From the IMG/VR virus record IMGVR_UViG_3300042923_000474, positions 1 through 64,000 of that record: 64,000 nucleotides of DNA; one strand, written 5' to 3'. Numbering within the stretch: the first letter of the stretch is position 1; each line of letters begins with the position of its first letter. Below the pieces are notes generated by a model. That model ran no database searches. It was not told the origin of the DNA and worked only from the letters and a program-made list of their open reading frames with translations. Positions 2,970 to 50,528 of this stretch are shown here, one piece after another. The position numbers and the translations under genes were made by a program.

Positions 2970-4475
2970 GTGGGGTTAATTGCCTACATCGTTGACCATA
3001 AGCAACTCCTCAATGAACTTGAAGAGCCACCGCTTGTTGTCAATGACCTGAATCTTGACTTCGGGACAAAAGAAGGTAAAGATCAGCTGGCCATGTATCT
3101 GTCGTTTCAATTCGACGGCGACATCATCCCAGCGGTACCAACCTGTCTCGGCGGTCACATCGGCGGGGAAGATAAACTCGGCGATAAGTGTGAGATCTGT
3201 GATACTCGGGTAACCAGTCTCGTAGACCGCGCTGTGGATCAGAGTGTTTGGATTCGCCCACCGGAAGGTGTCAACGGATTTATTCACCCTGAAGTCTGGA
3301 ACGTGCTGTCCCCCAGGCTGACTCCGCTCAAATCGTTCTCGATGCTGAGCTGGGTGTGTGACCCGAACTACGGCGAGACGTTACCGGCATTCGCTGCGGT
3401 GCTCGACGAGTACAAGAAGTTACACAAGCGTAGCCTCAACTACGTGTTGGAAAACTTCGATGACGTGATTCACTTCATCATTACATCGAAGCTGTGCAAC
3501 AAACTGTCGCTACAGGACAAGACCGACATTCAGTTGTTCTTGCTGCAAAACCGTGACAAGGTAATCCAGAAGTATCTGCCGTTACCTAGCTCCATCTTCG
3601 TGGTGTCCGAAAAGACAGCGATGGGTACCTACGCTGACGAGAAGACACCTGCCCTGTTGGATGCGATCTACATGATCACCTCCACCTACGGATCGGCCAT
3701 TGCGCTGAACCAACGGCAACGCGAATCGCACGCTGCTCGTTTCATGGCGGCTATCGGTCCGTGTTATCAGGCAATCTGTACCAAGTTCATCGGCAGTAAG
3801 TATGGTCTGGTTCGTCGTCAATTGATCGGCAGCCGTCTGCACTTTACTGGCCGGGCGGTTATCACTTCCATCAGTGATTCCCACCATTATGAAGAGCTGC
3901 ATGTACCTTGGGCTTTCGCTGTACAAATCCTGGAACCACATCTGCAGAACAAACTGATGCGCCGAGGCTTCTCAGCCAACGATGCACTGGAGTTCCTGGA
4001 AGATCACACGCTGCAATGGCATCCACTGTTGCGTGAACTGTTTGACGAACTGATTGCCGAAGCTCCGCCAATCGATGACTTCCCACCTGGGGTCTTCGAG
4101 GACATCGACAATGATCCATCGCTACTGCGTGGCATTCCGTGCCTGCTGCAGCGTAACCCATCGCTGACCCGCTTGTCGGCTCAGTGCCTGCGTATCACCC
4201 GAATCAAAGACGATGTCGAGGATTACACCATCTCGCTGTCGAACATGATTCTGGTCAGTTACAACGCCGACTATGACGGTGACGAACTGAACCTGTTGCT
4301 GTGCCTGGACAGGAAGATGCTGCAGTGGTTCGAGCGTTTCCGTCCACACCTGGGCATGCGTTCGCTGCGTGAGCCGCGTTCTTTGTCCGACAACCAGAAG
4401 ATCCACGCACCGGTCGCCGCTACATGGGCGCACTACGTGCACCATTCTGAACGTAAATCACCTACTGTTCATTAG
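2970..4475 (+). CDS. rpoC: Non-virion RNA polymerase beta' N-terminal subunit with catalytic Asp motif (phiKZ gp55-like)
   Basis: Contains a Zn-binding CLGGH...CEIC segment, KYGLVRRQLIGSRLHFTGRAVI, LQRNPSL and NADYDGD. Start reassigned to GTG 2970 (GGGAG SD at 2957-2961); the ORF-track start lies inside the RNA element. Confidence 0.93.
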   Translation: MGLIAYIVDHKQLLNELEEPPLVVNDLNLDFGTKEGKDQLAMYLSFQFDGDIIPAVPTCLGGHIGGEDKLGDKCEICDTRVTSLVDRAVDQSVWIRPPEGVNGFIHPEVWNVLSPRLTPLKSFSMLSWVCDPNYGETLPAFAAVLDEYKKLHKRSLNYVLENFDDVIHFIITSKLCNKLSLQDKTDIQLFLLQNRDKVIQKYLPLPSSIFVVSEKTAMGTYADEKTPALLDAIYMITSTYGSAIALNQRQRESHAARFMAAIGPCYQAICTKFIGSKYGLVRRQLIGSRLHFTGRAVITSISDSHHYEELHVPWAFAVQILEPHLQNKLMRRGFSANDALEFLEDHTLQWHPLLRELFDELIAEAPPIDDFPPGVFEDIDNDPSLLRGIPCLLQRNPSLTRLSAQCLRITRIKDDVEDYTISLSNMILVSYNADYDGDELNLLLCLDRKMLQWFERFRPHLGMRSLREPRSLSDNQKIHAPVAATWAHYVHHSERKSPTVH

Positions 4476-19983: not shown

Positions 19984-21504
19984 ATGCGGATTGACGTTTA
20001 CTCGCACGGGTACACAGTAAGTAAGTTGACACGCGCAGCCCTTACTGGCATCTCAAGGCTTTGCCGCTTCCTCGGACATTTTGAACTGCAGCCCAACGAA
20101 GTCGGTCGCTATGAGCAAAAGCAAACAGCGACTTACGCCGGTGGTTATGCAAACAGGGAGCTGTTCTGTTTTCACAAAGGCACGCTTGATCGCTTTCTGG
20201 CAATCATCCGTGACATTGATGCAAGCATTAAGCCTGAGATTGTCACCCACGAGTTGTGGGATTCTGTACCTGTAGAGATGAAGCTTAAAGACCTTCGAGA
20301 TCCTCGTTGGGGTCAGCCTGGTGCAATTCGCCATGCGATCGCTGAAGGGGAAATCAAGGCAGTCTGCCTAGGCCCTGGCCGCGGTAAGACGTTTGTGTTC
20401 AACCGAGTTACCCACCACTTCCAACGACGTGTGTGTATGGTCATTCGGGCGAACTATGTAGACAAATGGGAAGAGGATATCGGGGAAGCCCACGAGTGCG
20501 AGGATGGTGACATTCTCAAAGTCAAAGGTGGCAAGGACCTTATGGCCCTGATGCATGCGGCACTAGCGGGAACGCTGACAGCCAAGTACATCCTGATCTC
20601 TAACTCTACCTACCGCAATTACCTCAAGTTGTGGGAGATGGCGAGTGGTGACCTGAAAGACAAAGGGTTCCCTCTAAGTCCTCATGAAGTGATGGGTGCG
20701 TTGGGCGTAGAGATTCTGGGCATCGACGAGGTGCACCAGGACTTCCACTTCAACCACCGCCTGATCATCTACAGCCACGTTCCAAAGATCTTGACGCTGT
20801 CGGGTACACTGGACCCAGATAACTCGTTCAAGAACGATGTGACGAAGCTGACGTTCCCGTTAGAAACCCGCTTCATTGAGCCACCGCCTCCACCTTATCT
20901 GCGCTGCAAGGCTCTCCAGTTCTCGCTGGCCAGTCCGCATCTGATCAAGTGGAAGCACCGTGGTCGTTCCGAGTATTCGCAGGCCGCTTTGGAAAAGAGC
21001 ATCCTGCATTACAAGAAGACTCTGGACAACTACAAGAACATGATCCTGGACATCGCGTCCATCAGCTTTATGCCCTTGTGGAAACCCGGCAGGAAACTGT
21101 TGGTCTTCGCAGGCACGAAGAAGATGTGTACGGTGTTGGCAGATGCGTTCGCCAAGAAATACCCGGACATGCAAGTTCGGCGATACATTGGTGAGGACCC
21201 GTATGTTCATTTGCGTGAGGGTGACATCATTGTCTCCACCACCAAGTCGTGCGGTACGGCTGTCGACATTCCAGGCTTGGCCATCTCTTTGATGACCGAG
21301 GCGGTCAACGATACACAGGCGAACTTGCAGCACATTAAACGTCTGCGAGAACCGCCACCAGGACCGGATTACTTTACGCCCGAGTTTCTGTATTTCTTGT
21401 GCGTGAACATTCCACAACACATGAATTACCACAAACGCAAGACAGAGATCTTTGCGAAAGAGGTGATTTCCCATGAACTCTTATTAACGGATTACGTGAT
21501 ATGA
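19984..21504 (+). CDS. Superfamily 2 (DExH) helicase (phiKZ gp75-like)
   Basis: Walker A GPGRGKT, DEVH, TLSGT, and motifs V/VI (GTAVDIPG, QHIKRLR). Confidence 0.9.
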   Translation: MRIDVYSHGYTVSKLTRAALTGISRLCRFLGHFELQPNEVGRYEQKQTATYAGGYANRELFCFHKGTLDRFLAIIRDIDASIKPEIVTHELWDSVPVEMKLKDLRDPRWGQPGAIRHAIAEGEIKAVCLGPGRGKTFVFNRVTHHFQRRVCMVIRANYVDKWEEDIGEAHECEDGDILKVKGGKDLMALMHAALAGTLTAKYILISNSTYRNYLKLWEMASGDLKDKGFPLSPHEVMGALGVEILGIDEVHQDFHFNHRLIIYSHVPKILTLSGTLDPDNSFKNDVTKLTFPLETRFIEPPPPPYLRCKALQFSLASPHLIKWKHRGRSEYSQAALEKSILHYKKTLDNYKNMILDIASISFMPLWKPGRKLLVFAGTKKMCTVLADAFAKKYPDMQVRRYIGEDPYVHLREGDIIVSTTKSCGTAVDIPGLAISLMTEAVNDTQANLQHIKRLREPPPGPDYFTPEFLYFLCVNIPQHMNYHKRKTEIFAKEVISHELLLTDYVI

Positions 21505-23501: not shown

Positions 23502-24785
23502 TTAAGTGAAGTGACGCGATGGTTCAAAACGGGTGGTCTTCAAGGCAGTGCCGTGAGCCTTACCCATGAAGATGTAGAGCATCATCGATCCCATGTCCGA
23601 CGCCTGCCCACCCAGAGAGTTCGGGAAGCGTGCGTTCATGTCACCCATGCAGCGAGCACAGTAACCAGCACCTTCAGTGCGGCAACGTTGAGGGCTACGC
23701 AACAGGACAACCTTGTTCACGTACCGAGAGATGTTCTCCTTGGTCAGCGCAACGGTCTTGCCTTGTTCGATGATGTAGTAGCCAACATAACGATCTGCTT
23801 TGTTGGCATTGATCAGGCGACGAATACCGAGGATAGCTCCGCAGTCTTCTTCGGTGATCGCATGGTTCTGGAATACCCGGATCAGGTACTGTACAGCCTC
23901 ACCCCCGAGTGCAGTCTGTGCACCCCGGTTAAAGGAACCCTCACGCAGACTGTTGGCATAGTCAGGGAGGTTCTGAAGGTTGAGGCCTTCATCCAGAGAC
24001 GTGGGGATCAGGGTTACAGATGTACCGTCACCGAAAGCCGACTCCTCACCGTGCATGAGCAATGTCTTCATGCGAACGATGTCAAAGTTCTTCTTACCGA
24101 TGAGGTAGTCTTCCGAGTCATCCCCCTTGATCCATTCACGGTCAAGTTTGGACAGCTCACCCTTGATGATCGAAATCGTGGCCGGGTCGTGCAGACGATC
24201 CTTGTACTGCTCCAGCAACTTGGCGCGCAGCTCACGGATCTTCGGATCAGTCACCAGAGACTTACGTGTGGTCCCCGGTGTAAAGATCTGAGTCATACCC
24301 GACAGAATGCAGGCACAGGCCTCGGTGTACTTGAGGTACTCCCAGACGTAGATCTTGGCTGGATCGTTCTGACTACGGTCGGCGGGATTACTCGTCAACC
24401 TCGCGGCAATGATCTTTTCGACGTTGCTGATGCGGATGGCTTCCGGGTTGAACGGGATCTTGCCGTTGAACGCGTAGACCACAACGACATGGTGCCATAG
24501 AACCCAAGCGTAAGGGGCTTGGCAATCTGCTTCGCAGCCAATGAAGTCACCTTTCTTCAAGTCCACCAGTTCACGCTTCTGGTAGAGAGGTTTGGTTGCG
24601 TCCGCTTCAAAGCGCAGCTTGGATTCGCCGATCTTGACAACCCACTGCTTATCTTCGATGTACGGCTCGAACTCACCACCCTCGCCACGGGTGACAGTAA
24701 AGGCACGGATGGACCAAGACAATCGCTTGTACAGGCCCAGCTCCATGCACTTGAGGAAGAACAGCTTCTTGTCAAGCGTTTCCAT
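23502..24785 (-). CDS. rpoC: Virion RNA polymerase beta' fragment (phiKZ gp80-like)
   Basis: REGSFNRGAQTALGGEAVQY, EDCG and the LRSPQRC...YCARCMG Zn motif; a second set of beta' C-region motifs in the window. Confidence 0.88.
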   Translation of the reverse strand: METLDKKLFFLKCMELGLYKRLSWSIRAFTVTRGEGGEFEPYIEDKQWVVKIGESKLRFEADATKPLYQKRELVDLKKGDFIGCEADCQAPYAWVLWHHVVVVYAFNGKIPFNPEAIRISNVEKIIAARLTSNPADRSQNDPAKIYVWEYLKYTEACACILSGMTQIFTPGTTRKSLVTDPKIRELRAKLLEQYKDRLHDPATISIIKGELSKLDREWIKGDDSEDYLIGKKNFDIVRMKTLLMHGEESAFGDGTSVTLIPTSLDEGLNLQNLPDYANSLREGSFNRGAQTALGGEAVQYLIRVFQNHAITEEDCGAILGIRRLINANKADRYVGYYIIEQGKTVALTKENISRYVNKVVLLRSPQRCRTEGAGYCARCMGDMNARFPNSLGGQASDMGSMMLYIFMGKAHGTALKTTRFEPSRHFT

Positions 24786-25614
24786 GACCCAGTACCTTTG
24801 TCAGAATCTTGGTGATCACACCCATGATGCGTTGACCCGCCAGACTGGAACCCAGCACCGGTTCAATCAAGTGGGCGGTTTCCTGAATCAGGTCATTGCG
24901 AGGCAGATCAGAGATCAATGCCATGCCCGCCACCTCAACGGCCATCTCCTCAGGCGGGATGCCTTGGAACCATGCGTCGTTGTTCAGGATCAGGGTGTTC
25001 ATTGACTGACCCAGTGCGGCACCATCACGGACGTAGGCCACCACCTTGGCGTCTGGGTACAGGGCGGCAAAGACGCGGAAGTCGCTCAGCGCACCCGAAG
25101 CCACCTTAGGCTCATCGAGGGTCAGCACAGGCTCAGACTTGAACGTACCATCCAGTTTGTTGATCAGGCTGTCCGATACGCTGACGATCCAGTCGATCAT
25201 GTGACCGTCATGGTTCTTACCGGCAGACTCAAACAACTCGATCAGGATGTCTTCATTACTGGCACCCATCTCCCGTACGTCTGTGCCTTCTGGATAGTCA
25301 GCAGGCGACACACCTTCAGGCGTATCCCACATGACCAAGAACTCCAAGAGGTCAGCGGTAACGCTCAAGGCTGAGGGTTCGAACTCGATCTCTACACCGA
25401 ACTGAGCATAAGCGGCAAGGATACCCTCGATCATCATGTTCTCGGCATTGCCAGCGATGACCTCAGGTTCAATGCCCTGTTCACCCAGGACGATGTGTTC
25501 GATGCGATCGGTATGACCGTTCATGCCAAACCGGTAAAGTAGGTTGATTGCATGCATCAATTCTACTACCCGATTGGGGTGGTAAACGGCGTTGAAGAAT
25601 TTCTCAAGGTCCAT
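24772..25614 (-). CDS. Conserved hypothetical protein
   Basis: Likely start ATG 25614 (MDLEKFFNAVY); overlaps the vRNAP gene start. Confidence 0.75.
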   Translation of the reverse strand: MDLEKFFNAVYHPNRVVELMHAINLLYRFGMNGHTDRIEHIVLGEQGIEPEVIAGNAENMMIEGILAAYAQFGVEIEFEPSALSVTADLLEFLVMWDTPEGVSPADYPEGTDVREMGASNEDILIELFESAGKNHDGHMIDWIVSVSDSLINKLDGTFKSEPVLTLDEPKVASGALSDFRVFAALYPDAKVVAYVRDGAALGQSMNTLILNNDAWFQGIPPEEMAVEVAGMALISDLPRNDLIQETAHLIEPVLGSSLAGQRIMGVITKILTKVLGHGNA

Positions 25615-25721: not shown

Positions 25722-26678
25722 ATGGCAAAAAACAAAGGCGGTTCTTTCGGCAGCCGCAAAGGCGTCCGCACTCCACCGGTGATGGTGCAAGGTAACACCA
25801 TGCGTTTCAGCAAAGATCCATCGCCATGGTTTGCCGACTTCGACTCTCTGGCGGCGCAGTGCACCTCACTGACCACCTCCCCCGGCATCCTGTTGAACTT
25901 CATCAACGATGCCGAACTGATGGCCAAGGTTGACCGCGACGCGCTCAACACCAGCATCCAGTCAATGAACGAGCTGATCCTCAAGGAAAAGACTCGTCTC
26001 AAGGGCCTGAAAGAAGAAACCCGTATCCTGCGTGAAGGTGCTCCGGCCGACGGCGATAAGCCTGCCCGTGAAGCAATCACCCGCATCACCCAGGACAACA
26101 CCATTCCACTGCTGGACCACGGCGAGCAGTTCCAACTGTTCATGAACGACTGGGTCAACGTGATCTACTTCGCTCTGGACGAATGCCTGCAACACTTCCG
26201 TGCCGCCGGCGCCGAGATCCCTGTCCTGTGCCCACGCAGCCCAGGCTTCTTCAAGACCGAAGGCACCATGACTGCCGACGAGTTGAAGAAGGCTCAAGAG
26301 ATCAGCCTCACCGAACTGCAACGCGACGAGCGTGATGCGCAGGAAGTGGTTGAGATCGTTCAGGCAATGGCCGGGCGCTTCAAGCGTAAGCACTACCGTC
26401 ACGTGGCCAAAGGTCTGGGCATCCCTGAAACGCACTTCGAAGCACTGGTCCAGGGCAATCACGCCCTGCTGACTTCCGCGCAGTTGAAAGACGTGCGTGC
26501 GAAGCTGGACGCGGCCATTGCCTCCGTGCCGAAAGATGATCTGCCAGTCGATGAGAAGGAGGCTGAAATCTCCGCGCGTCTGGCTCAGCCCAACCCAATC
26601 GACTCCAACGGTTACGCACGCGGCCAGCGTCCTGAAATCGTGCACATCGACGAAGCCCCCTTCATCAAAAGCGAGTAA
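25722..26678 (+). CDS. Hypothetical protein, probably highly expressed
   Basis: AAAGGA SD; strong codon bias. Confidence 0.8.
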   Translation: MAKNKGGSFGSRKGVRTPPVMVQGNTMRFSKDPSPWFADFDSLAAQCTSLTTSPGILLNFINDAELMAKVDRDALNTSIQSMNELILKEKTRLKGLKEETRILREGAPADGDKPAREAITRITQDNTIPLLDHGEQFQLFMNDWVNVIYFALDECLQHFRAAGAEIPVLCPRSPGFFKTEGTMTADELKKAQEISLTELQRDERDAQEVVEIVQAMAGRFKRKHYRHVAKGLGIPETHFEALVQGNHALLTSAQLKDVRAKLDAAIASVPKDDLPVDEKEAEISARLAQPNPIDSNGYARGQRPEIVHIDEAPFIKSE

Positions 26679-26680
26679 TC

Positions 26681-28318
26681 ATGAAAGACGATTCTGATCT
26701 GCCCCAAGAGCAACCTCTGGGCGGCGACGAGGGTGAGTTCCCGGTTGACAACACTCCGGTGGTGCCAGCGGCTGCTCGCCCTGCCGAAGAGGCTGAGCCT
26801 ACCCCACGTACCGAACTGGACTTCAACGAAGACAGCGACCTGTTGTCCGAAGCAGAAGCCTCCGGTGGTGCAGCTGAACCTGAAAAGCCGTTCTACGGCG
26901 AACGTCACTGGACCAACGAACACGTGTTCGGTCATGACGAGATGGTTAAAGAGCGTCCGGCGAACTACGCGCCTCGCTTCACCCTGATCGTGCCTACGAT
27001 GTCCATGACCGACACTGAAAAGGTCGGCAATGCCTTGGCCCCGGTTATGAAGCATCTGGCGCCTGCGGCCCGTACATGGGTCGAGAAGGTACTGTCCAGT
27101 CAGCTGATGGTGATGGCAGACGACCAGTTCACCGATGCGCTGGAACGTGATGGTTCCATGTGGATTCAGCGTCCTGAATACGACGGCACTAAGCTGGTTG
27201 CCCAAGTACCCGGCGTTGTGCAGCCTGCAGCGGGTGCAATCCTGTCTGGTCAGGATGCCGAAATCCACATGGCGCAACAGACTGGTAAGTACGCCCGTCT
27301 GATGTTCCCGCTGGTGCACACCGGTATCTGGCTGAACGTGCAGGTACCAGAAGGCGATGAGCTGCATACGCTCGAAGAGCATATCGCGGCTGCCAAGTAT
27401 GAATTGGGCTGGCTGTCCAAAGGCCTGGTTTACTCCAACACCTCGGTCATGCAGAACATCATCCTGGCCAACTTCATTCTGGAGCGTGCTGTTGCGTCTT
27501 CGGCTGAAGTCACCTCGCTGGAGTTCCTGAAGAAGGTCATTCGCATCACCGACCTGAACCTCATGGCAGCTCACATGGCGTCGGCGATCTACCCATCGGG
27601 CTTCCCGCTGGAGCGTCCTTGCTCTGCTTCCCCGCAGACCTGCCACGAGATCACCAAAGGCATTCTGCGCCTGTCGAAGATCATCTGGGTTGACAGCAAT
27701 GGCCTGTCGATTGACCAGAAGAAATTCATGGCCACTCGCCTGACCGGTCGCAAGAAGACTGAGGCTGACTTCAAGAAGTATCAGGAGCAGTTCCCAGGCG
27801 TCACTCAGCGCGTTGAACAGATCGCCCCGAACATCTGGGTGCGTTTCATGCCTCCGACGCTGGAGCAGTACGAGCAGTCCGGCTACGACTGGATCGACTC
27901 GATCGAGCGCGATGCCAACCAGGTTCTCTCCACGCCGAGCGGTCAGCAGCTCAACAGCTACATGCAAAAGCAATACCAGCTGACCTCGATGCGTCAGTAC
28001 GCTCACTGGGTGGATGCCATCATCTATCCAAACGACGTGCAGACCACTGGCCGTGAAGACATCAACAACCTGCTGGCGAAGAACTCGTCCAACACGGAGA
28101 TGGTGGAAAAGTTCATGAAGGCTGTCAAACGCTTCATCGACGACTGCACTGTTGGTCTGGTCGGTATCAACAACTACGACTGCCCGAAATGCGGTAACTC
28201 GCAGACTGCGGAAGCCGTGCGCAATCCGAAGTTGATCCCACTCGATCCAATGCACACTTTTTTCACCCTCAGCGGCCTGAAGACTCAAACTATTCAATCA
28301 GCAAATATGGCGTACTAG
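26681..28318 (+). CDS. Cys-motif protein, tentatively baseplate-hub/tail assembly chaperone-like; 0-frame product of a frameshift locus
   Basis: CSASPQTC and CPKCG motifs; acidic disordered N-terminus; slippery site near the 3' end. Confidence 0.7.
   Translation: MKDDSDLPQEQPLGGDEGEFPVDNTPVVPAAARPAEEAEPTPRTELDFNEDSDLLSEAEASGGAAEPEKPFYGERHWTNEHVFGHDEMVKERPANYAPRFTLIVPTMSMTDTEKVGNALAPVMKHLAPAARTWVEKVLSSQLMVMADDQFTDALERDGSMWIQRPEYDGTKLVAQVPGVVQPAAGAILSGQDAEIHMAQQTGKYARLMFPLVHTGIWLNVQVPEGDELHTLEEHIAAAKYELGWLSKGLVYSNTSVMQNIILANFILERAVASSAEVTSLEFLKKVIRITDLNLMAAHMASAIYPSGFPLERPCSASPQTCHEITKGILRLSKIIWVDSNGLSIDQKKFMATRLTGRKKTEADFKKYQEQFPGVTQRVEQIAPNIWVRFMPPTLEQYEQSGYDWIDSIERDANQVLSTPSGQQLNSYMQKQYQLTSMRQYAHWVDAIIYPNDVQTTGREDINNLLAKNSSNTEMVEKFMKAVKRFIDDCTVGLVGINNYDCPKCGNSQTAEAVRNPKLIPLDPMHTFFTLSGLKTQTIQSANMAY
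28258..28264 (+). other. Putative programmed -1 ribosomal frameshift site T TTT TTC
   Basis: In-frame X XXY YYZ heptamer; the -1 frame is open from here to stop 28803. Confidence 0.7.
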
Positions 28319-28803
28319 AATCCCCCGTTATTCGGTCCAATGGGCAATTGGTTGCTAACACTCAGCGACACGTTAACGACCCGCACTTTGGACTGGACAC
28401 CGAGGTATTCGACCGAGAGCTGGATCGGATTAAAACCGATACCCAAGCTCTCGGTGAACGCCCTGACTATGTGGATTCTGAAATGATGATGCGGGCTCTG
28501 TACGAGACTGCATTTGGCATTCACAACCACTACGGTGGGAAGCAGCATCCTTTTGCTCCGGTCGCGGCATATCCCAAGGAAGACTTCGCTCCGTACTCCA
28601 GTCGCTTTCGCGATTATGCTCGTTACATGGACGAACGTATTTTCGAGGCTACTGGGATTCCATTGGACAGTTTCTTCAAACGCCCTCGGGCAGAGATTGA
28701 AACGATCTTTGGTTTGGTCAGATTGCGCAACAAGAAACAATCAGCTAGCGCAGAAGAAATCGCTGCCGCTGCTGCCAAGAAAATGAAAGAGGGCAAGGGC
28801 TAA
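28261..28803 (+). CDS. -1 frame extension (ORF-track 28348-28803), likely expressed as a fusion with 26681
   Basis: No ATG/GTG between the upstream in-frame stop (28195-28197) and the SD-less TTG at 28348. Confidence 0.65.
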   Translation, partial: FHPQRPEDSNYSISKYGVLESPVIRSNGQLVANTQRHVNDPHFGLDTEVFDRELDRIKTDTQALGERPDYVDSEMMMRALYETAFGIHNHYGGKQHPFAPVAAYPKEDFAPYSSRFRDYARYMDERIFEATGIPLDSFFKRPRAEIETIFGLVRLRNKKQSASAEEIAAAAAKKMKEGKG

Positions 28804-29120
28804 TGAAAGACACCCTACGTCAAGGTCAGCACGATGTTCAGTTGGAGGCAGGTAAAACTACTCCCAACTCTATCGCTGATCTGGGTATGATCTTTGACCG
28901 TCACACGAGGCAGCTGATTAACTACCGTGACCTCATGTCTGAGGCAGATGTGTGTCGCTGGTTCAACATCCGCAAGGGTGAGCTGCGCAAGGCTGTAGCA
29001 CGTGGTGAGTTCCCTAAAGCCACGACGCTTAAAGCAGGTAACACTCCGTTCTGGGCAGATAGCATCATTGCTCGGGTACGGCGGGTAGACAACGAAGAAG
29101 AAGACTACGTTGGTGCCTGA
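28803..29120 (+). CDS. Small AlpA/excisionase-like helix-turn-helix DNA-binding protein
   Basis: MSEADVCRWFNIRKGELRKAVARGEFPKA...PFW pattern; TAATG coupling; GAGGG SD. Confidence 0.6.
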   Translation: MKDTLRQGQHDVQLEAGKTTPNSIADLGMIFDRHTRQLINYRDLMSEADVCRWFNIRKGELRKAVARGEFPKATTLKAGNTPFWADSIIARVRRVDNEEEDYVGA

Positions 29121-29162
29121 CGGCATAGCCGCCTGCCCCTAGGGGCAGGCGGTGCTTTATGC
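29121..29162. terminator. Bidirectional terminator
   Basis: CGGCATA + perfect palindrome CCGCCTGCCCCTAGGGGCAGGCGG + TTTATGC. Confidence 0.85.
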
Positions 29163-30914
29163 GCTCTCTTTGTGGTCTTCGTCGTACCAAGCCAGCAGGT
29201 CGTTAGACGATGGCAGGCCCAGCAGTTGTTGTGCAATCATGTTACCGTTGACATGTCCACCCGTAAGGTCAATGCCGATCCACCTCCACTGATCCTCTTC
29301 CATGTCATCCACTGACGACAACTCAGTCTGAGTCGTGAACTTGTCAATGTTGAGCATGTCTTGCAGCTTCGGATAAGTAGAGACCACGTCAATGTCAGAC
29401 ACGTGAGTGTGCAACAGTGTTCTGTGGCCGAACATGTCTCGAACAAGGTCTTTGTCTGAGTCAGGTCCCATGTACGCAGGTAGGGTGATGATCCAATTCC
29501 CTAATCCGGGACTGGCCTGGTCCACCTCCGTCAGCATCTCATCGCTGGTGGTACCGGCTACCAAGCCTCGGCCCAACAGGAAGAAGTGTAAGTCGTCAGC
29601 GATCATCCGTGGCTGAGAGTCGTAGTTACGATACTCAGAGCACTTCAGCAAAGCAGGCAGACACATGGAGATGTCTTTGGTCACCTCGTCCAGCATCTCT
29701 ACGCCGATATCGTCGTAAAGGTTGTATACGCAGTATTCCACTGGGTAATACTTCTGCATGAACGCATGCCACTCACCCTTGACGTAACCATCGGCCTGAG
29801 TGAACTTGAGCTTACCGGCTAACTTGTGCTTACGCAGCAGGTAGTCCAGGTTGTACTCAGGGTCGTTCGCAGACGCTGTACGGATACGCTTGTACAACAG
29901 CATCGAGTCACAGATCTGGAAGGAGGCCTGCAGACTAACGGTGTGCCATTGGTCAATTGGGTTGATTGGAACCTTGGTATCCTTACCACCATCCTTTTTG
30001 ATCTTGTGTGCAGCGCCTTGGTTCCACTTGAAGTTACGGAACTTCTTGGGGATACGTTGATCGCAGAACACATCGGACGGGTCGTAACCAGAGTCCAGCA
30101 GAGCTTGTTCAGATTTGGGGATATCGAACGCCATGTTGAAGATGGTCACGTAGTCTGGTTGCCACTGGTGGGCGGCCTCAAAGGACTTCTGCACCAGATG
30201 CGCTGGCAAGTCTAGGATGTTGATCTCCAGACTCTTAGGATCGAAAGGATCAATCCCTCGCTGCTTAAGAATGGACCCGAGCAGCTCCTCACTCTTTTCC
30301 CGCACCAGTTGTTCAAAGCGTGCAGGCTCTTTATCTGCCTCTGGGATGGCCGATTCAGCGATCCAGTTGGACAGGATGTTTTGACAAGCCTTTTCCTTTA
30401 ATGTCATAGACGCAATGATGATCTCCTTTTCTTCGGAGTTCATGTTGGTCTCGATATCGTAGACGGCCACACTGCTTGGGGTCGGTGTACCGCCGTACTT
30501 ATCCCGATAGCCACGCTTAATCAACACAGGCGTCTGGATGTCGGCACCGTATAAGTAAGCTGAACGTGCAAGCTGTCGTAATCCCCCACGAGCAGCCGGG
30601 TTGCCCAGTGCCCGAGCGACCTTATTATGTAGTTCATGCTGACTGCAAGTGAACTTTCGAAGGTGCTTCAGAGGCGCCCATGGGCGCTTGTCCTTATGGG
30701 TCCGATACTTATCCAGCGTGACGTAAAAGTCGCGTTGGTAGTTGTGTATCAGCCGCACGTTCGGAATGATTCTTCCGTCCTTGCAGTGAATCAGTTCCTT
30801 GACGACCACCACATCGTTAGGCGAGTAGTCATTCGCTTTTGAATAGGTGGCATGCACGCATTCGTAGCGGTCGATCTCATCTCGTGTGGGCAGTTCCGGG
30901 TATGCGAATGCCAT
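29157..30914 (-). CDS. Family B DNA polymerase, split subunit with 3'-5' exonuclease and motif A (phiKZ gp82-like)
   Basis: Exo I YDIET, Exo II FNMAFDI, Exo III YNLYD and motif A DIDVVSTYP; ends without motifs B/C. Confidence 0.88.
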   Translation of the reverse strand: MAFAYPELPTRDEIDRYECVHATYSKANDYSPNDVVVVKELIHCKDGRIIPNVRLIHNYQRDFYVTLDKYRTHKDKRPWAPLKHLRKFTCSQHELHNKVARALGNPAARGGLRQLARSAYLYGADIQTPVLIKRGYRDKYGGTPTPSSVAVYDIETNMNSEEKEIIIASMTLKEKACQNILSNWIAESAIPEADKEPARFEQLVREKSEELLGSILKQRGIDPFDPKSLEINILDLPAHLVQKSFEAAHQWQPDYVTIFNMAFDIPKSEQALLDSGYDPSDVFCDQRIPKKFRNFKWNQGAAHKIKKDGGKDTKVPINPIDQWHTVSLQASFQICDSMLLYKRIRTASANDPEYNLDYLLRKHKLAGKLKFTQADGYVKGEWHAFMQKYYPVEYCVYNLYDDIGVEMLDEVTKDISMCLPALLKCSEYRNYDSQPRMIADDLHFFLLGRGLVAGTTSDEMLTEVDQASPGLGNWIITLPAYMGPDSDKDLVRDMFGHRTLLHTHVSDIDVVSTYPKLQDMLNIDKFTTQTELSSVDDMEEDQWRWIGIDLTGGHVNGNMIAQQLLGLPSSNDLLAWYDEDHKESA

Positions 30915-47581: not shown

Positions 47582-49162
47582 ATGCCCAACGGTAACTTTG
47601 CCATCGGGAACACCTACGAGACGACAACCCGCCCCGTGGCTTGGGCCGTGGCAAAAGATTGCCTTGCTCGTTTAGGGTTCGCCGAGGGTGCCTTCTTGAA
47701 CTTTGTCGGGCACTATGAAAAGACCCAGACAAAAGACACCGCCATTGACGACTATCAGAACAAGAACTGGTTCGGTACTAACACCGAAGCGATTCTGCAA
47801 GTCGAAGAAGATCCGATCATTGAAAGGATCTACGAGGCGTCCGTCATCCGACTGGATAACGTCCCTGTGTTCAAAGACGCAGAGACCCACACTTACATCC
47901 GCCCCATCTACCAACCCGTCAAGATGACCTTGCGCTTTCGCTTGCGTTGTAAAGATGAGGTGGAGGCTAACCGCTACCGCGACGACACATGGGCACGATC
48001 CCATCTGTTACGCCATGAGGGGCTGCATGAGCTTACTTACCACTGGCAACTGCCTAAGGTCTACCTTGTCATCTTGCAGGAGATCTGGAAGCTCCAGGAG
48101 GCTCACGACAAGACAGGGACTTCATTCGGTAAATACTTGCGTGATCGCTTCGATCCTCGCATTGACACCGTGACCAACTTGGCTGGTAAAGAGGCTACGT
48201 TGGTTGTACCGGAAGATCAAGTCCGTGCGTTGGGTTGGTTTGACTTTGCTGGGGTGATGGAAAAACCTACCTTCAACAAAGACAACGGTACGTGGGATCT
48301 GGAATGGTCGTACAGTCTGGTCTATGACAAACCTGTCGAAGCTGCCATGACTTATCCGCTGGTGGTTCGCCAGAAGATGATCGGGCCAGACTTCCGTCCA
48401 ACCAAGGGCATGTACAAACTCGACGACAAAGATCCAAGTCTGTCGAACGTGCAGCGCTCGCTGTTCAGCTTCTTCAACGTGTGGGTGCCGCCCAAGGGGA
48501 TTCTGGATCGTCGTTATCCAGACTTCGACACGTGGGAGCCAGAGGCGCCTACCTACGGCTGCATGGATCTGTGGATTGGCATGCTCGGGCTTAAGCTTGA
48601 GAACCGCCGTGATCTCGTGTCCGTTAACCGCCTAGGTGAGCATAAGCTCTCCGACGCTGCCCTCACCCTGTTGATGGATGAGCGTGAGTACGTCTGTAAC
48701 CCCCGTCAGAGCATTTTCGAGATTGGGGTGTACTCTGACAACGAAAGAGCCTTCCCTGATCAGGTGACGCTCGGTGAGGACGGCATTGTGCGGGCCAACT
48801 TTGACCTGTCAATGATTCCGATCTATCACGTCGTGGTTTCGTTCCGTACGGATCTGCGCACCCTCGACCCTGAGAACATCCCTCGCATTACCAAGAACGC
48901 CTGCAAGGTCTACGGCGTATTGGCAGAGATGTATCCTCGTGCTGTTGAGTTGGGCCTACTCCCATTACCCAGCAAGCGCTGTCAGTGGACATGGGATCAG
49001 TGGCAACAGATCGTTGAGGTCGTCAGCCCCCCACCACGTCGCCCTAATCCCAACCCTGGAGTGGGAGGCGGAACCTCTGTCTCAGCTAACCAACGTCGTC
49101 TAGCCATGCAGACGGTAGGCACATACACCATCATTACCCGGAGAGACAAAAATGTTGATTGA
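47582..49162 (+). CDS. Virion structural protein (possible neck/tail-terminator)
   Basis: AAGGA SD; position in the structural block. Function is inferred. Confidence 0.55.
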   Translation: MPNGNFAIGNTYETTTRPVAWAVAKDCLARLGFAEGAFLNFVGHYEKTQTKDTAIDDYQNKNWFGTNTEAILQVEEDPIIERIYEASVIRLDNVPVFKDAETHTYIRPIYQPVKMTLRFRLRCKDEVEANRYRDDTWARSHLLRHEGLHELTYHWQLPKVYLVILQEIWKLQEAHDKTGTSFGKYLRDRFDPRIDTVTNLAGKEATLVVPEDQVRALGWFDFAGVMEKPTFNKDNGTWDLEWSYSLVYDKPVEAAMTYPLVVRQKMIGPDFRPTKGMYKLDDKDPSLSNVQRSLFSFFNVWVPPKGILDRRYPDFDTWEPEAPTYGCMDLWIGMLGLKLENRRDLVSVNRLGEHKLSDAALTLLMDEREYVCNPRQSIFEIGVYSDNERAFPDQVTLGEDGIVRANFDLSMIPIYHVVVSFRTDLRTLDPENIPRITKNACKVYGVLAEMYPRAVELGLLPLPSKRCQWTWDQWQQIVEVVSPPPRRPNPNPGVGGGTSVSANQRRLAMQTVGTYTIITRRDKNVD

Positions 49163-50528
49163 AGTTGACCCGGCCAAGCCAAAAAAAGAAGCCAGTGGTC
49201 GTGTAGTCCCGATGGACATGAGCACGGCTCTGGTGCAGTCCCGCTTCCAGCCTCGTGAGTCGTTGATCACGATGATGGCGGGTTCCATCTTCTCCACCAC
49301 GTGGTTCTTCCAAGTGGGTGGCACTGCCGATGCCCCTAAGCCTCAGCAATTGGAACAGGACGCACCGTGGCAACAATATGAACGTGTCAACAATTACGAG
49401 ACACGTTTGCAGGGCGACCTCTCTTTCTCCTACGTGGAAGAATCGGGAGATCGCACGGTTACTGGCACTCTGCAGACTTACCCCGGTAGGCAGCCAAATG
49501 TTGGCGACCCGTTCCTGGCCGATGCTGGCGACGGGCGTGTGGGGCACTTTGAGGTGACCAACGTTGAACCACTGACCTGGATGAATCAGGCGTGCTACAG
49601 CGTGCAGTTTGTCCTCAAGGCTCGCAATGATCCGATTCGCTTGGCTGACCTTGAAAAGAAAACCGTCGAGACGTTTCAGTTCGTCACCGACTTTATCCGC
49701 TTTGGCAAGAACCCCGTTCTGATCGACTCGCTGTACCAAGACTACCGCACGCTGTTTCGCACCAGCGAGACAATGATCGGTGAGTACATGCGTTTGTTCT
49801 TCAGTGAGGTTAGCCAAACCCTCATGATTCCTGGACAGGCTACAAACTGCTATGATCCCTTTCTGGTTTCTGCTGTGCTCGGCGTTCTTGAAACTACCGA
49901 ACACCCACTACTGCGCAAAGTCTCGGCCCACAACACCGACGCCCAGTACGCTTTTCGAACCACCACGATCTGGGATGCCCTCCTGCAAATGGAGCCCAGT
50001 CACATCCACCTCTCGTGCCAGCGCCTTGGTCTAGCCACCAAAGCCGTTGTCCGTACCCGCGCTAACTACGGCGGGGCCTATTGGGCGCAGATCGACCACA
50101 TCATGTTTCCTATGGAAGCGCGTGAAGATGTGGACGCCATGCGCACTGGGCCAACCTACACCGCTACCCATCGTCTGGACCCAGGGCCTGCACCTGTCCG
50201 TGACTTCAACCGACTGATCCGTGAGAAAGACACCACCAGTGTTCGTATCGTGGAGAAGTTGGAAGAGCGTGACCGCGTGGTTAACATTCACGATGTCACG
50301 GTCGACGATTACTACGTGTTCAGCAAGGCCTTCTATGAAGAAGACGCGGCTGGCATGAGTCATTTGGAGAAACTTGTCTGGGCTGTCCTCAATCAGGGCG
50401 AACTGGATGTCCCTAAACTGGCTCAGTTGGTCCGCCAGTCGAAGTATTGGGATAAGCTCGAACGTTTCTACTACGTGCCAGTGCTGATGATTCTTTGCAT
50501 CTTGGCAATGCGAGGACCTTCGATATGA
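49152..50528 (+). CDS. Virion structural protein (possible T4 gp14-like neck protein)
   Basis: PNVGDPFLADAGDGRVGHFEVTNV resembles the head-closure pattern; GGAG SD. Confidence 0.55.
   Translation: MLIEVDPAKPKKEASGRVVPMDMSTALVQSRFQPRESLITMMAGSIFSTTWFFQVGGTADAPKPQQLEQDAPWQQYERVNNYETRLQGDLSFSYVEESGDRTVTGTLQTYPGRQPNVGDPFLADAGDGRVGHFEVTNVEPLTWMNQACYSVQFVLKARNDPIRLADLEKKTVETFQFVTDFIRFGKNPVLIDSLYQDYRTLFRTSETMIGEYMRLFFSEVSQTLMIPGQATNCYDPFLVSAVLGVLETTEHPLLRKVSAHNTDAQYAFRTTTIWDALLQMEPSHIHLSCQRLGLATKAVVRTRANYGGAYWAQIDHIMFPMEAREDVDAMRTGPTYTATHRLDPGPAPVRDFNRLIREKDTTSVRIVEKLEERDRVVNIHDVTVDDYYVFSKAFYEEDAAGMSHLEKLVWAVLNQGELDVPKLAQLVRQSKYWDKLERFYYVPVLMILCILAMRGPSI

What the first reader, a model, noticed from the sequence alone, without database searches (positions are those of the whole stretch)
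26681..28803. Probable programmed -1 frameshift producing a short/long protein pair
Seen: codons ACT TTT TTC give the slippery heptamer T TTT TTC (28258-28264), 18 codons before the 0-frame stop. The -1 frame is closed at 28195-28197, then open through the slip site to 28803 (FFHPQRPEDSNYSISKYGVLESPVIRSNGQLVANTQ...). It has no ATG/GTG and only an SD-less TTG before the called ORF. Products would be 545 aa and about 707 aa. Established: tailed phages make G/GT tail-assembly chaperones by -1 slippage. Inference: this is a jumbo-phage equivalent, with a Cys-motif domain and remote from the tail genes. I am not aware of it being described in phiKZ-like phages. No obvious stimulatory structure was seen.
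Basis: partly seen in the sequence, partly recalled or inferred. Interest (0 to 1): 0.85.

Follow-up and report, generated by a model that had tools for sequence, protein, structure and literature searches.

The report
Conserved frameshift in jumbo-phage core gene
A core gene of unknown function in nucleus-forming (phiKZ-like) jumbo phages carries a run of T's where a −1 reading-frame slip would fuse it to the next "gene", giving a short and a long protein, and this layout is kept in all 44 relatives examined yet is unannotated and, as far as I could find, undescribed.

Summary
ORF 26681-28318 (545 aa) contains ACT TTT TTC (T TTT TTC, 28258-28264). The −1 frame is closed at 28195-28197 and then open to 28803. 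It has no ATG or GTG before 28471, only an SD-less TTG at 28348.

The upstream ORF is Chimalliviridae core gene cg18 (phiKZ gp077). The −1 ORF is the phiKZ gp076 / PhiPA3 gp073 homolog.

In 44 of 44 distinct lineages (phiKZ, PhiPA3, Goslar, RAY, SPN3US-like, EL-like, Vibrio, Ralstonia and Xanthomonas phages, and metagenomes, down to about 21% protein identity):
- A T5-T8 run sits at the same Phe-Phe site.
- The downstream ORF is always in the −1 frame.
- There is no −1-frame stop in 880 overlap codons, where 64 are expected.
- The Phe codon is TTT in 30 of 30 lineages, and the preceding codon ends in T in 28 of 31, whatever its amino acid.
- No conserved start codon or SD exists. phiKZ has none for 87 codons.
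- No in-frame fusion was seen.

Best explanation: a programmed −1 ribosomal frameshift (U_UUU_UUY, as in P2 E/E+E′) giving 545-aa and 707-aa isoforms. Transcriptional slippage is the main rival. The suggested equivalence to G/GT tail chaperones is not supported; function is unknown. I rate this a new member of a known kind. No experiment bears on it yet.

The parts
26681..28318 (+). 0-frame ORF, 545 aa: homolog of Chimalliviridae core gene cg18 (phiKZ gp077, PhiPA3 gp074, Goslar gp081, RAY gp267). This is the short product.
   Evidence: ORF list. PHROG 4585, E 3e-98. tblastn matches in 205-240 phage records. PhiPA3 annotation note. cg18 table in the supplement of PMC10299810. AF2 model pLDDT 77, pTM 0.78, with the 0-frame tail forming helix 523-544.
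28258..28264 (+). Slippery heptamer T TTT TTC (U_UUU_UUC) in X_XXY_YYZ phase. This is the proposed -1 shift site.
   Evidence: Sequence. The homologous run is T5-T8 in 44 of 44 lineages, and 39 of 44 have the full heptamer T_TTT_TT(C/T/G). Codon-usage test.
28253..28283 (+). Block around the shift site that is almost invariant at the nucleotide level. It is identical in 7 of 8 window-clade lineages whose proteins are only 50-81% identical to the window's; L060 alone differs, at 28275. This is the dual-coding region.
   Evidence: Alignments A4 and A6.
28264..28803 (+). -1-frame extension: 179 codons plus a TAA stop. It begins with a Pro/Glu/Ser-rich linker, followed by a conserved helical domain homologous to PhiPA3 gp073 / phiKZ gp076. 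Joined to residues 1-528 it gives the 707-aa long product.
   Evidence: Translation. tblastn matches immediately downstream of the cg18 homolog in 25 records. PHROG 12109, E 9e-21. Alignment A2. AF2 model pLDDT 67, with residues 1-19 disordered.
28195..28197 (+). TAA that closes the -1 frame 60 nt upstream of the run.
   Evidence: In the relatives the last upstream -1 stop lies 12-188 nt 5' of the run and never 3' of it.
28316..28318 (+). 0-frame stop codon TAG, ending the short product.
28319..28368 (+). Variable spacer of the -1 frame between the 0-frame stop and the conserved HVNDP..FGL motif. It is translated only if the frame was shifted upstream.
   Evidence: In 8 clade members the distance from the 0-frame stop to the motif is 53, 44 or 41 nt. 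The differences are multiples of three, although the sequence is very divergent.
28801..28805 (+). TAATG: the stop of the -1 ORF overlaps the ATG of the next gene (28803-29120, 105 aa).

Best explanation
This is a programmed -1 ribosomal frameshift that is conserved across nucleus-forming jumbo phages (Chimalliviridae).

Most ribosomes translating core gene cg18 (26681-28318) terminate at TAG 28316 and make a 545-aa protein. That protein ends in a C-terminal helix.

A fraction of ribosomes slip back one base. This happens with tRNA-Phe on the UUU and UUC codons of the heptamer U UUU UUC (28258-28264). They then read CAC CCU CAG... in the -1 frame. This replaces the last 17 residues with a flexible Pro/Glu-rich linker and a ~150-aa helical domain, giving a 707-aa protein that ends at 28803.

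What is shown here: the sequence anatomy, and its conservation under selection at synonymous sites.

What is inferred: that the slip is ribosomal, that the long form is the minor product, and that both forms are functional.

The biochemical role of cg18 is unknown.
For: 1. The geometry is exact in the window.

2. In 44 of 44 distinct lineages (64 loci) the same layout holds:
- Protein identity to the window falls to about 21-26%.
- The loci include phiKZ/KTN4, PhiPA3, Goslar, RAY, SPFM17, CR5, an EL-like phage, VP4B, Miami, RSL2, LucasX and Xoo-sp14.
- A T5-T8 run sits at the same Phe-Phe position, 8-44 codons before the 0-frame stop.
- The downstream homolog is always in the -1 frame and open across the run.

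3. -1-frame stops occur once per 13.8 codons in the gene body (1579 in 21818 codons). There are none in the 880 overlap codons, where 63.7 are expected. The +1 frame has 60 stops there (P~1e-20 on the 31-lineage set).

4. Synonymous sites are constrained:
- The first Phe codon is TTT in 30 of 30 lineages. The product of local TTT usage is 1e-14.6.
- The preceding codon ends in T in 28 of 31, where 9.5 are expected, although its amino acid varies (T, L, I, V, A, S, Y, G).

5. Phase is as expected for ribosomal slippage:
- 39 of 44 lineages have T_TTT_TT(C/T/G) in X_XXY_YYZ phase.
- The other 5 still keep the T_TTT tetramer in phase.

6. U_UU.C and U_UU.U are the next best -1 tetramers after A_AA.G in E. 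coli. U_UU.U_UU.C/U shift without stimulators and are used by some IS elements (PMC4066793). P2 E/E+E' and its relatives use T6G, T7G or T7C (PMC3931495).

7. There is no conserved start for the second ORF:
- The first ATG/GTG/TTG lies 14-87 codons after the run.
- It is at non-homologous positions and mostly without an SD.
- phiKZ has none for 87 codons, RAY none for 70 and L058 none for 75, although conserved residues lie upstream of those points.

8. The spacer after the 0-frame stop changes length only in multiples of three.

9. No fused gene was found:
- The 150 best of 1428 representative hits to the -1 domain are 100-191 aa with ragged N-termini.
- All 12 close cg18 homologs are 525-579 aa.

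10. The AF2 model makes the 0-frame tail a confident C-terminal helix and the start of the -1 part disordered. This fits two real isoforms.
Against: - There is no experimental evidence of any kind: no junction peptide, reporter assay or ribosome-profiling data.
- No conserved 3' stem-loop or pseudoknot, and no 5' SD-like stimulator, was found. Fold z-scores ranged from -1.95 to +1.14, the RNAalifold covariation term was +0.24, and Rfam gave nothing. Efficiency could therefore be low, and the ratio of the two forms is unknown.
- Five of 44 lineages lack the full heptamer: G/A_TTT_TTT in the PhiPA3 and 201phi2-1-like clades, and GTT TTT in L026.
- Run length alone (>=6 in 43 of 44 lineages) would equally fit transcriptional slippage. 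The phase of the run is partly forced by the conserved Phe-Phe.
- A few lineages have an internal start codon with a fair SD. Examples are the L028 ATG (dG -8.0) and the YongMS32 TTG (dG -7.1). Independent initiation may therefore add to, or in places replace, the shift.
Confidence: 0.72

Rival explanations
1. Programmed transcriptional slippage. The RNA polymerase, here one of the phage's own non-canonical multisubunit enzymes, stutters on the A-run of the template. It adds one extra U to a fraction of transcripts. Standard translation of those mRNAs then runs into the -1 ORF and gives the same 707-aa protein.
For: - What is conserved without exception is a homopolymeric T-run, at least 6 long in 43 of 44 lineages and often 7-8.
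- The five lineages without a full X_XXY_YYZ heptamer still have T5-T6.
- No ribosomal stimulatory structure was found.
- UUUUUUU is under-represented in E. coli genes in all three frames, possibly because of transcriptional slippage (PMC4066793).
- T>=6 runs are nearly absent from coding sequence in this window.
Against: - From my own knowledge, not tested here: documented bacterial slippage sites usually need runs of about 8-9 or more. Here 19 of 44 lineages have only T5-T6.
- 20 of 44 lineages use TTC as the second Phe codon. This shortens the run but gives U_UU.C, the best U-type ribosomal tetramer.
- The run is always in the ribosomal phase.
- Nothing is known about slippage by phiKZ-type polymerases.
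Confidence: 0.16
2. These are two ordinary separate genes. The second protein is started independently. This could be a non-canonical or poorly conserved start codon, or termination-reinitiation after the 0-frame stop. On this view the T-run only reflects a conserved Phe-Phe in the first protein.
For: - GenBank records annotate two separate CDSs in every annotated record inspected (22 of the 25 records; 3 carry no annotation), and none carries a joined or slippage feature.
- Some lineages have a plausible start with an SD (L028, YongMS32).
- The gap between the ORFs is short, as in coupled genes.
Against: - It does not explain TTT in 30 of 30 lineages against local codon usage, or the T at the preceding wobble position in 28 of 31.
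- It does not explain the complete lack of -1 stops from the run to the 0-frame stop (0 against 63.7 expected) while the +1 frame has 60.
- It does not explain conserved residues and frame-preserving indels upstream of any start codon.
- It does not explain the invariable -1 relationship in 44 lineages.
- Annotated starts are ragged, and gene callers sometimes skip the ORF entirely.
Confidence: 0.07
3. The T6 run is a sequencing or assembly indel, or a recent inactivating mutation, in what is really one continuous gene.
For: Homopolymer runs are the classic site of sequencing indels. The window itself is a metagenome-derived contig (IMGVR_UViG_3300042923_000474).
Against: - The same two-frame layout is found in 44 independent lineages.
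- These were sequenced by many groups and platforms, and include well-studied isolates such as phiKZ-type KTN4, PhiPA3, Goslar, RAY and RSL2.
- Run lengths of 5, 6, 7 and 8 all give the same -1 offset.
- No in-frame version was found among the 150 best representatives or the 12 close homologs.
Confidence: 0.01

Closest known systems
Phage P2 tail genes E / E+E' (and P2-like Smp131 orf27/27.1)
   Same: A -1 shift on a T-run slippery sequence near the 3' end of the upstream gene. P2 uses T6G and its relatives T7G or T7C (PMC3931495). It produces a short protein and a C-terminally extended one. No start codon is needed for the second frame, and the arrangement is conserved across a phage group that has little sequence similarity.
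   Different: - E is a small tail-assembly chaperone encoded between tail tube and tape measure genes.
- Here the upstream protein is about 545 aa, lies among replication and transcription genes, and has no Pfam match to GpE.
- The only link is a chance-level Atlas hit (score 0.84, rank 75).
Phage lambda G / GT tail-assembly chaperones (Levin, Hendrix & Casjens 1993; Xu, Hendrix & Duda 2004, as cited in PMC3931495)
   Same: The short/long pair is made by a -1 shift close to the end of the first ORF. From my own knowledge, the long form in lambda is the minor species. The frameshift is conserved where protein sequence is not.
   Different: - The slippery sequence differs (G GGA AAG in lambda, from my own knowledge).
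- Gene position, size and fold differ.
- Timing appears to differ: the Churi homolog of cg18 is listed among early-expressed proteins.
- No tape-measure neighbour is present.
E. coli dnaX (tau/gamma) and IS3-family orfA/orfAB -1 frameshifts
   Same: These are -1 shifts on homopolymer-type X_XXY_YYZ heptamers that set a ratio of two protein isoforms. U_UU.U_UU.C is among the heptamers used by IS elements (PMC4066793).
   Different: - From my own knowledge, those sites have defined stimulators: an SD-like element and a stem-loop or pseudoknot. None was detected here.
- In dnaX the shift shortens the protein. Here it lengthens it.
T4 gp26 / gp51 baseplate hub assembly chaperones (Pfam PF12322 T4_baseplate)
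   Same: - Language-model features place cg18 nearest, among named clusters, to clusters carrying PF12322: 86 of 100 named hits, best score 0.92 with 205 shared features.
- Two GenBank records call cg18 homologs 'baseplate' or 'gp26-like'.
- T4 gene 26 also yields two products, annotated as 26 and 26'.
   Different: - There is no HMMER match to PF12322 in the 36 family members scanned.
- Profile-profile probability is only 1.1%.
- gp26 is 208 aa.
- From my own knowledge, its second product comes from internal initiation, not from frameshifting.

Membership tests
Programmed -1 ribosomal frameshift site (X_XXY_YYZ type) | A slippery heptamer, or at least a Z_ZZN tetramer, in the correct phase of the upstream frame. 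| tested here: met
   The window has T_TTT_TTC. The full heptamer is present in 39 of 44 lineages and the T_TTT tetramer is in phase in all 44.
Programmed -1 ribosomal frameshift site (X_XXY_YYZ type) | The -1 ORF is open across the site, extends far beyond the 0-frame stop, and lacks its own conserved initiation signal. | tested here: met
   There are 0 stops in 880 overlap codons, where 63.7 are expected. The extension is 151-181 codons. The first start-type codon lies 14-87 codons after the run, at non-homologous positions and mostly without an SD.
Programmed -1 ribosomal frameshift site (X_XXY_YYZ type) | The site is conserved among homologs beyond what the protein sequence requires. | tested here: met
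   The first Phe codon is TTT in 30 of 30 lineages (1e-14.6 under local codon usage). The preceding wobble base is T in 28 of 31, where 9.5 are expected. An almost invariant ~31-nt block (one substitution in one lineage) is shared by 8 lineages whose proteins are 50-81% identical to the window's.
Programmed -1 ribosomal frameshift site (X_XXY_YYZ type) | A stimulatory element: a 3' stem-loop or pseudoknot 5-9 nt downstream, or a 5' SD-like sequence. This is common but not obligatory. | tested here: not met
   No conserved structure was found. Fold z-scores ranged from -1.95 to +1.14. RNAalifold found only an invariant hairpin overlapping the run, with covariation term +0.24. Rfam gave nothing. 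No conserved upstream SD was seen.
Programmed -1 ribosomal frameshift site (X_XXY_YYZ type) | The trans-frame protein is detected, with the shift occurring on the ribosome rather than in the mRNA. | not testable with these tools
   This needs MS or western blots, a reporter assay, and RNA-level sequencing of the run.
Tail assembly chaperone pair (lambda G/GT, P2 E/E+E') | Encoded between the tail tube gene and the tape measure gene. | tested here: not met
   The neighbours are a helicase, an RNA polymerase beta subunit, cg19-like and gp078-like genes, a small ORF and a DNA polymerase.
Tail assembly chaperone pair (lambda G/GT, P2 E/E+E') | A small upstream protein (~100-150 aa) with sequence or profile membership in a tail-chaperone family. 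| tested here: not met
   The upstream protein is 545 aa. No Pfam or NCBIfam chaperone family matches. The only link is an Atlas lead to PF06528 at 0.84, which is chance level.
Tail assembly chaperone pair (lambda G/GT, P2 E/E+E') | A -1 frameshift near the 3' end giving a C-terminally extended second product. | tested here: met
   This is met by comparative inference only, as set out above.
T4 gp26/gp51 hub assembly chaperones (PF12322) | A match to the Pfam model or to a family profile. | tested here: not met
   No PF12322 hit at E<=1 in the 36 family members scanned. hhalign of A3 against the gp26/gp51 profile A5 gave probability 1.1%. A2 against A5 gave 0.3%.
T4 gp26/gp51 hub assembly chaperones (PF12322) | A shared fold. 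| not tested
The only indirect evidence is from the Atlas: feature score 0.92, and TM 0.45-0.60 between a cg18-like model and a cluster in which 14% of members carry PF12322.
Chimalliviridae core gene cg18 (phiKZ gp077) | Sequence homology to phiKZ gp077, PhiPA3 gp074, Goslar gp081 and RAY gp267. | tested here: met
   PHROG 4585, E 3e-98. tblastn to PhiPA3 gp074, E 1e-46, with 205 records matched. cg18 table.
Chimalliviridae core gene cg18 (phiKZ gp077) | Conserved neighbourhood: a gp078-like gene upstream on the same strand, and cg19/gp079 with a vRNAP subunit nearby. | tested here: met
   Window genes at 25722-26678 (+), 24775-25614 (-) and 23505-24785 (-, RNAP beta). The same order is seen in PhiPA3, KTN4, Goslar and RAY.

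The most novel reading that the evidence does not exclude
The family-wide recoding is not a passive, constant-ratio ribosomal slip. One possibility is that it is produced by the phage's own unusual multisubunit RNA polymerases (programmed transcriptional slippage on T6-T8). Another is that it is tuned during infection by phage factors that bind host ribosomes. Either way the short:long ratio of core protein cg18 would change between early and late infection and act as a developmental switch. A related reading is that cg18 short/long is the long-missing G/GT-type assembly-chaperone pair of phiKZ-like tails or baseplates.
Probability: 0.15. Interest if true: 0.8.

Novelty: new member of a known kind. 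Interest (0 to 1): 0.62.

Why it matters
cg18 is one of the core genes shared by nucleus-forming jumbo phages, and its function is unknown (PMC10299810).

- **Annotation.** If the frameshift is real, two "hypothetical" genes (phiKZ gp077 and gp076, and their equivalents in more than 240 sequenced phages) are one expression unit making two isoforms. The second ORF is currently annotated with arbitrary, truncated or missing starts. That affects core-genome counts, knock-out and Tn-seq interpretation, and any structural or interaction study of either protein.
- **Recoding biology.** From my own knowledge, nearly all known phage -1 frameshifts are in tail-assembly chaperone genes. This would be a deeply conserved example outside them. 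It uses a U-rich heptamer with no detectable stimulator, in phages whose mRNAs are made by non-canonical polymerases and exported from a nucleus-like compartment before translation.
- **Testability.** The prediction is easy to test, because the junction peptide and a single synonymous change are defined.

Tried and rejected
- **DNA search.** Megablast of the region against the phage collection found nothing. The window is a novel phage; its closest cg18 relative is 34% identical.
- **Protein family and structure-by-sequence searches.**
  - Pfam and NCBIfam gave no significant family for either part.
  - PHROGs gave only families of unknown function.
  - PDB sequence and profile searches found nothing for either part. 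cg18 is therefore not in any deposited phiKZ or Goslar structure.
- **T4 gp26/gp51 relationship.** I built a family profile (A5) and ran hhalign. Probabilities were 1.1% and 0.3%, so membership was rejected on sequence grounds and kept only as a lead.
- **Stimulatory RNA.** Single-sequence folds for 10 lineages, RNAalifold on 8 clade members, and Rfam found nothing convincing.
- **Other signals near the site.**
  - No sigma-70 promoter-like site lies in 27800-29300, and the only terminator-like hit (29151) is beyond the pair, so nothing separates the two ORFs.
  - The window has no tRNA, and so no phage tRNA-Phe.
- **Literature.** Ten searches combined phiKZ, Chimalliviridae, nucleus-forming, jumbo phage, gp76/77 and cg18 with frameshift or slippage terms. 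None returned a description of this event. All 'gp77' hits referred to other phages' numbering.
- **SPN3US virion proteome text.** It gave no information on the homologs.
- **In-frame fusion search.** None was found among the best 150 representatives or the 12 close homologs. The remaining ~1280 weaker representative hits could not be listed.
Full report
**Observation**

The window has ORF 26681-28318 (+, 545 aa). Codons 526-528 are ACT TTT TTC, so T TTT TTC occupies 28258-28264 in X_XXY_YYZ phase, and the 0-frame stop TAG (28316-28318) is the 18th codon after TTC. The -1 frame has a TAA at 28195-28197 and is then open to the TAA at 28801-28803. It reads FFHPQRPEDSNYSISK....

After the run, the first start-type codon in that frame is TTG 28348, with no Shine-Dalgarno (dG -2.4). 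Next come GTG 28471 and ATG 28483, which lie inside the conserved part of the domain. The products would be 545 aa and 528+179 = 707 aa.

The genome is 54% GC, and Phe is TTT in only 22% of cases. FF pairs are TTCTTC in 22 of 29. This is the only T>=6 run inside a credible CDS in the 64 kb; the others are intergenic and often follow GC-rich hairpins.

**Identity of the genes**

- Megablast finds no close phage.
- By tblastn the upstream protein matches 205-240 phage records, all jumbo phages of the phiKZ type.
- PhiPA3's own annotation equates its homolog gp074 with phiKZ gp077 and 201phi2-1 gp136. It equates the next gene, gp073, with 201phi2-1 gp135.
- The supplement of Prichard et al. 2023 lists Goslar gp081 / PhiKZ gp077 / RAY gp267 as core gene cg18, 'hypothetical protein'.
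- The -1 ORF matches the gene immediately downstream of the cg18 homolog in 25 records.
- Both parts fall in PHROGs of unknown function.
- Pfam, NCBIfam and PDB give nothing.

**Comparative test**

I collected 64 loci:

- IMG/VR contigs found with the protein and with a family alignment.
- 25 GenBank phage records chosen to span the family.
- Four Logan contigs of the window's own clade.

They reduce to 44 distinct lineages, with protein identity to the window down to about 21-26%. In all 44:

- A T-run (T5 x1, T6 x18, T7 x18, T8 x7) lies at the homologous Phe-Phe of the motif ...P-[LI]-D-x-x-x-x-F-F-T-L..., 8-44 codons before the 0-frame stop.
- The downstream homolog is in the -1 frame.
- That frame is open across the run and continues for 151-181 codons.

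The heptamer as read in frame 0 is distributed as follows:

| Heptamer | Lineages |
|---|---|
| T_TTT_TTC | 20 |
| T_TTT_TTT | 17 |
| T_TTT_TTG | 2 |
| G_TTT_TTT | 3 |
| A_TTT_TTT | 1 |
| C_GTT_TTT | 1 |

All 44 keep at least the T_TTT tetramer in phase.

**Is this more than protein conservation?**

- The first Phe codon is TTT in 30 of 30 lineages. The product of the local TTT frequencies is 1e-14.6.
- The preceding codon ends in T in 28 of 31, where 9.5 are expected, although it encodes T, L, I, V, A, S, Y or G.
- -1-frame stop codons occur once per 13.8 codons in the body of the gene (1579 in 21818 codons). There are none in the 880 codons between the run and the 0-frame stop, where 63.7 are expected. 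The +1 frame has 60 there.
- The last upstream -1 stop lies 12-188 nt 5' of the run, often only 12-13 nt, and never 3' of it.
- In the window's clade, 8 lineages have proteins 50-81% identical to the window's. In them, 28253-28283 is identical at the nucleotide level except for a single substitution in L060, while flanking codons vary freely.
- The very divergent spacer between the 0-frame stop and the conserved HVNDP..FGL motif changes length only by 9 or 12 nt.

**No independent start**

The first ATG/GTG/TTG in the -1 frame lies 14-87 codons after the run. It is at non-homologous positions and mostly has a negligible SD. phiKZ-type KTN4 has none for 87 codons, RAY none for 70 and L058 none for 75, yet conserved residues lie upstream of those codons.

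Annotators have accordingly placed the second gene's start anywhere:

- KTN4_102 is cut to 80 aa.
- RAY gp266 overlaps gp267 by 136 nt.
- RSL2 ORF188 starts at a CTG.

Gene callers skipped the ORF altogether in two Logan contigs. A profile of the -1 domain hits 1428 cluster representatives. The best 150 are 100-191 aa, with N-termini starting anywhere between profile positions 1 and 71, and none is a ~700-aa fusion. Twelve close cg18 homologs are all 525-579 aa. None of the annotated GenBank records inspected (22 of the 25; 3 have no annotation) carries a joined or slippage CDS.

**Mechanism**

The data fit the classical simultaneous-slippage model. tRNA-Phe in the P and A sites on UUU-UUY re-pairs with UUU-UUU one base back.

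- In E. coli the tetramer hierarchy is A_AA.G >> U_UU.C > U_UU.U. H_HH.U_UU.Y heptamers are among the efficient ones. U_UU.U_UU.C/U shift at more than 0.1% without stimulators and occur in IS elements (PMC4066793).
- P2 E/E+E' and its relatives use T6G, T7G or T7C (PMC3931495).
- I found no conserved stimulator. Folds of the 80 nt after the site in 10 lineages have z-scores from -1.95 to +1.14. RNAalifold on 8 clade members gives only an invariant small hairpin overlapping the run, with covariation term +0.24. Rfam has no hit, and no SD-like motif is conserved upstream.
- I therefore expect the long form to be the minor product. This is inference.

Transcriptional slippage giving one extra U would yield the same protein and cannot be excluded. 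It would fit the run-length rule and the five lineages without a full heptamer. However, T5-T6 runs (19 of 44) and the frequent TTC (20 of 44) argue for the ribosome.

**Proteins**

AF2 with a 26-sequence alignment gives a confident α/β model of the 545-aa form (pLDDT 77, pTM 0.78). The 0-frame tail after FF is part of a C-terminal helix (523-544).

The -1 part models as a disordered ~20-residue linker followed by helices, with high confidence only for roughly the last 60 residues (pLDDT 67). The shift would thus swap a terminal helix for a tethered extra domain.

**Function**

Function is unknown.

- The ESM Atlas places cg18, among named clusters, nearest to clusters in which a minority of members carry PF12322 (T4 gp26/gp51 hub-assembly chaperones): 86 of 100 named hits, best score 0.92.
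- Two GenBank records use 'baseplate' or 'gp26' labels.
- HMMER finds no PF12322 in the 36 family members scanned, and hhalign against a gp26/gp51 profile gives 1.1%.
- The structure comparison that could settle this was unavailable.
- The gene lies among helicase, RNA polymerase and DNA polymerase genes.
- Its Churi homolog gp256 is listed among early-expressed proteins (PMC11849849).
- The G/GT-equivalent reading is therefore not supported. It is also not excluded as a distant analogy.

**Literature**

Ten full-text searches found no description of recoding in phiKZ-like phages. Every 'gp77' hit referred to other numbering systems.

**Verdict**

This is a real, deeply conserved recoding signal. 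It is most likely a -1 ribosomal frameshift that joins core gene cg18 to the following ORF. It is a new member of a known kind, not a new mechanism, and it still needs experimental proof.

Noticed in passing
window 2949, 6386, 9842, 19963, 22991, 54244 (+ strand): All other T6-T10 runs of the window are intergenic, or sit at a doubtful ORF start. They lie just upstream of gene starts, and several follow a GC-rich inverted repeat (for example GGGAG...CTCCC before 19963). They look like intrinsic terminators or intergenic punctuation. T>=6 runs seem to be avoided inside coding sequence.
   Followed up: partly
window 28801-28805 and 28803-29120: The stop of the -1 ORF overlaps the ATG of the next small gene (TAATG; 105 aa, no PHROG match). 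This gene could therefore be translationally coupled to the frameshifted reading frame rather than to the 0 frame.
   Followed up: no
L046 (Erwinia phage RAY) 2736-3284; L043 (KTN4) 3321-3563; L001 (RSL2) 2600-2992: GenBank starts for the second ORF are inconsistent. RAY gp266 overlaps gp267 by 136 nt, the phiKZ-type KTN4_102 is truncated to 80 aa, and RSL2 ORF188 begins at a CTG. This is a symptom of an ORF without a real start codon.
   Followed up: yes
L057 (phage T4) 3803-4429 (-) and 4480-5229 (+): T4 gp26 and gp51 both match PF12322 (E 9e-64 and 4e-52), so they are paralogous hub-assembly proteins. Gene 26 is annotated with a second, internal product 26'. cg18 shows a superficially similar P-x-C...C-x-H-V...L motif, but the profile match is not significant.
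   Followed up: partly
window 49181-49187: An A7 run (CCAAAAAAAG) lies 19 nt after the stop of ORF 47582-49162 and inside the start of the overlapping ORF 49152-50528. Being downstream of the first stop, it cannot join the two ORFs. It was not examined further.
   Followed up: no
window 28258-28800 (-1 part), Atlas search: The only named cluster among the 100 nearest language-model hits to the -1 extension is the P2 GpE tail protein family (PF06528), itself a frameshifted chaperone. The score is 0.84 with 103 shared features, which is chance level. Weak structural resemblance to AraC-type helix-turn-helix domains (TM 0.26-0.36 by query) was also listed.
   Followed up: no
window 29160-30914 (-), 23505-24785 (-), 19984-21504 (+): The neighbourhood encodes a 585-aa DNA polymerase piece (PHROG 3011), an RNA polymerase beta-type subunit (PHROG 2962) and a helicase (PHROG 16). 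This is typical of phiKZ-like genomes. The window is the metagenomic contig IMGVR_UViG_3300042923_000474 (231.7 kb), which has no close cultured relative.
   Followed up: partly
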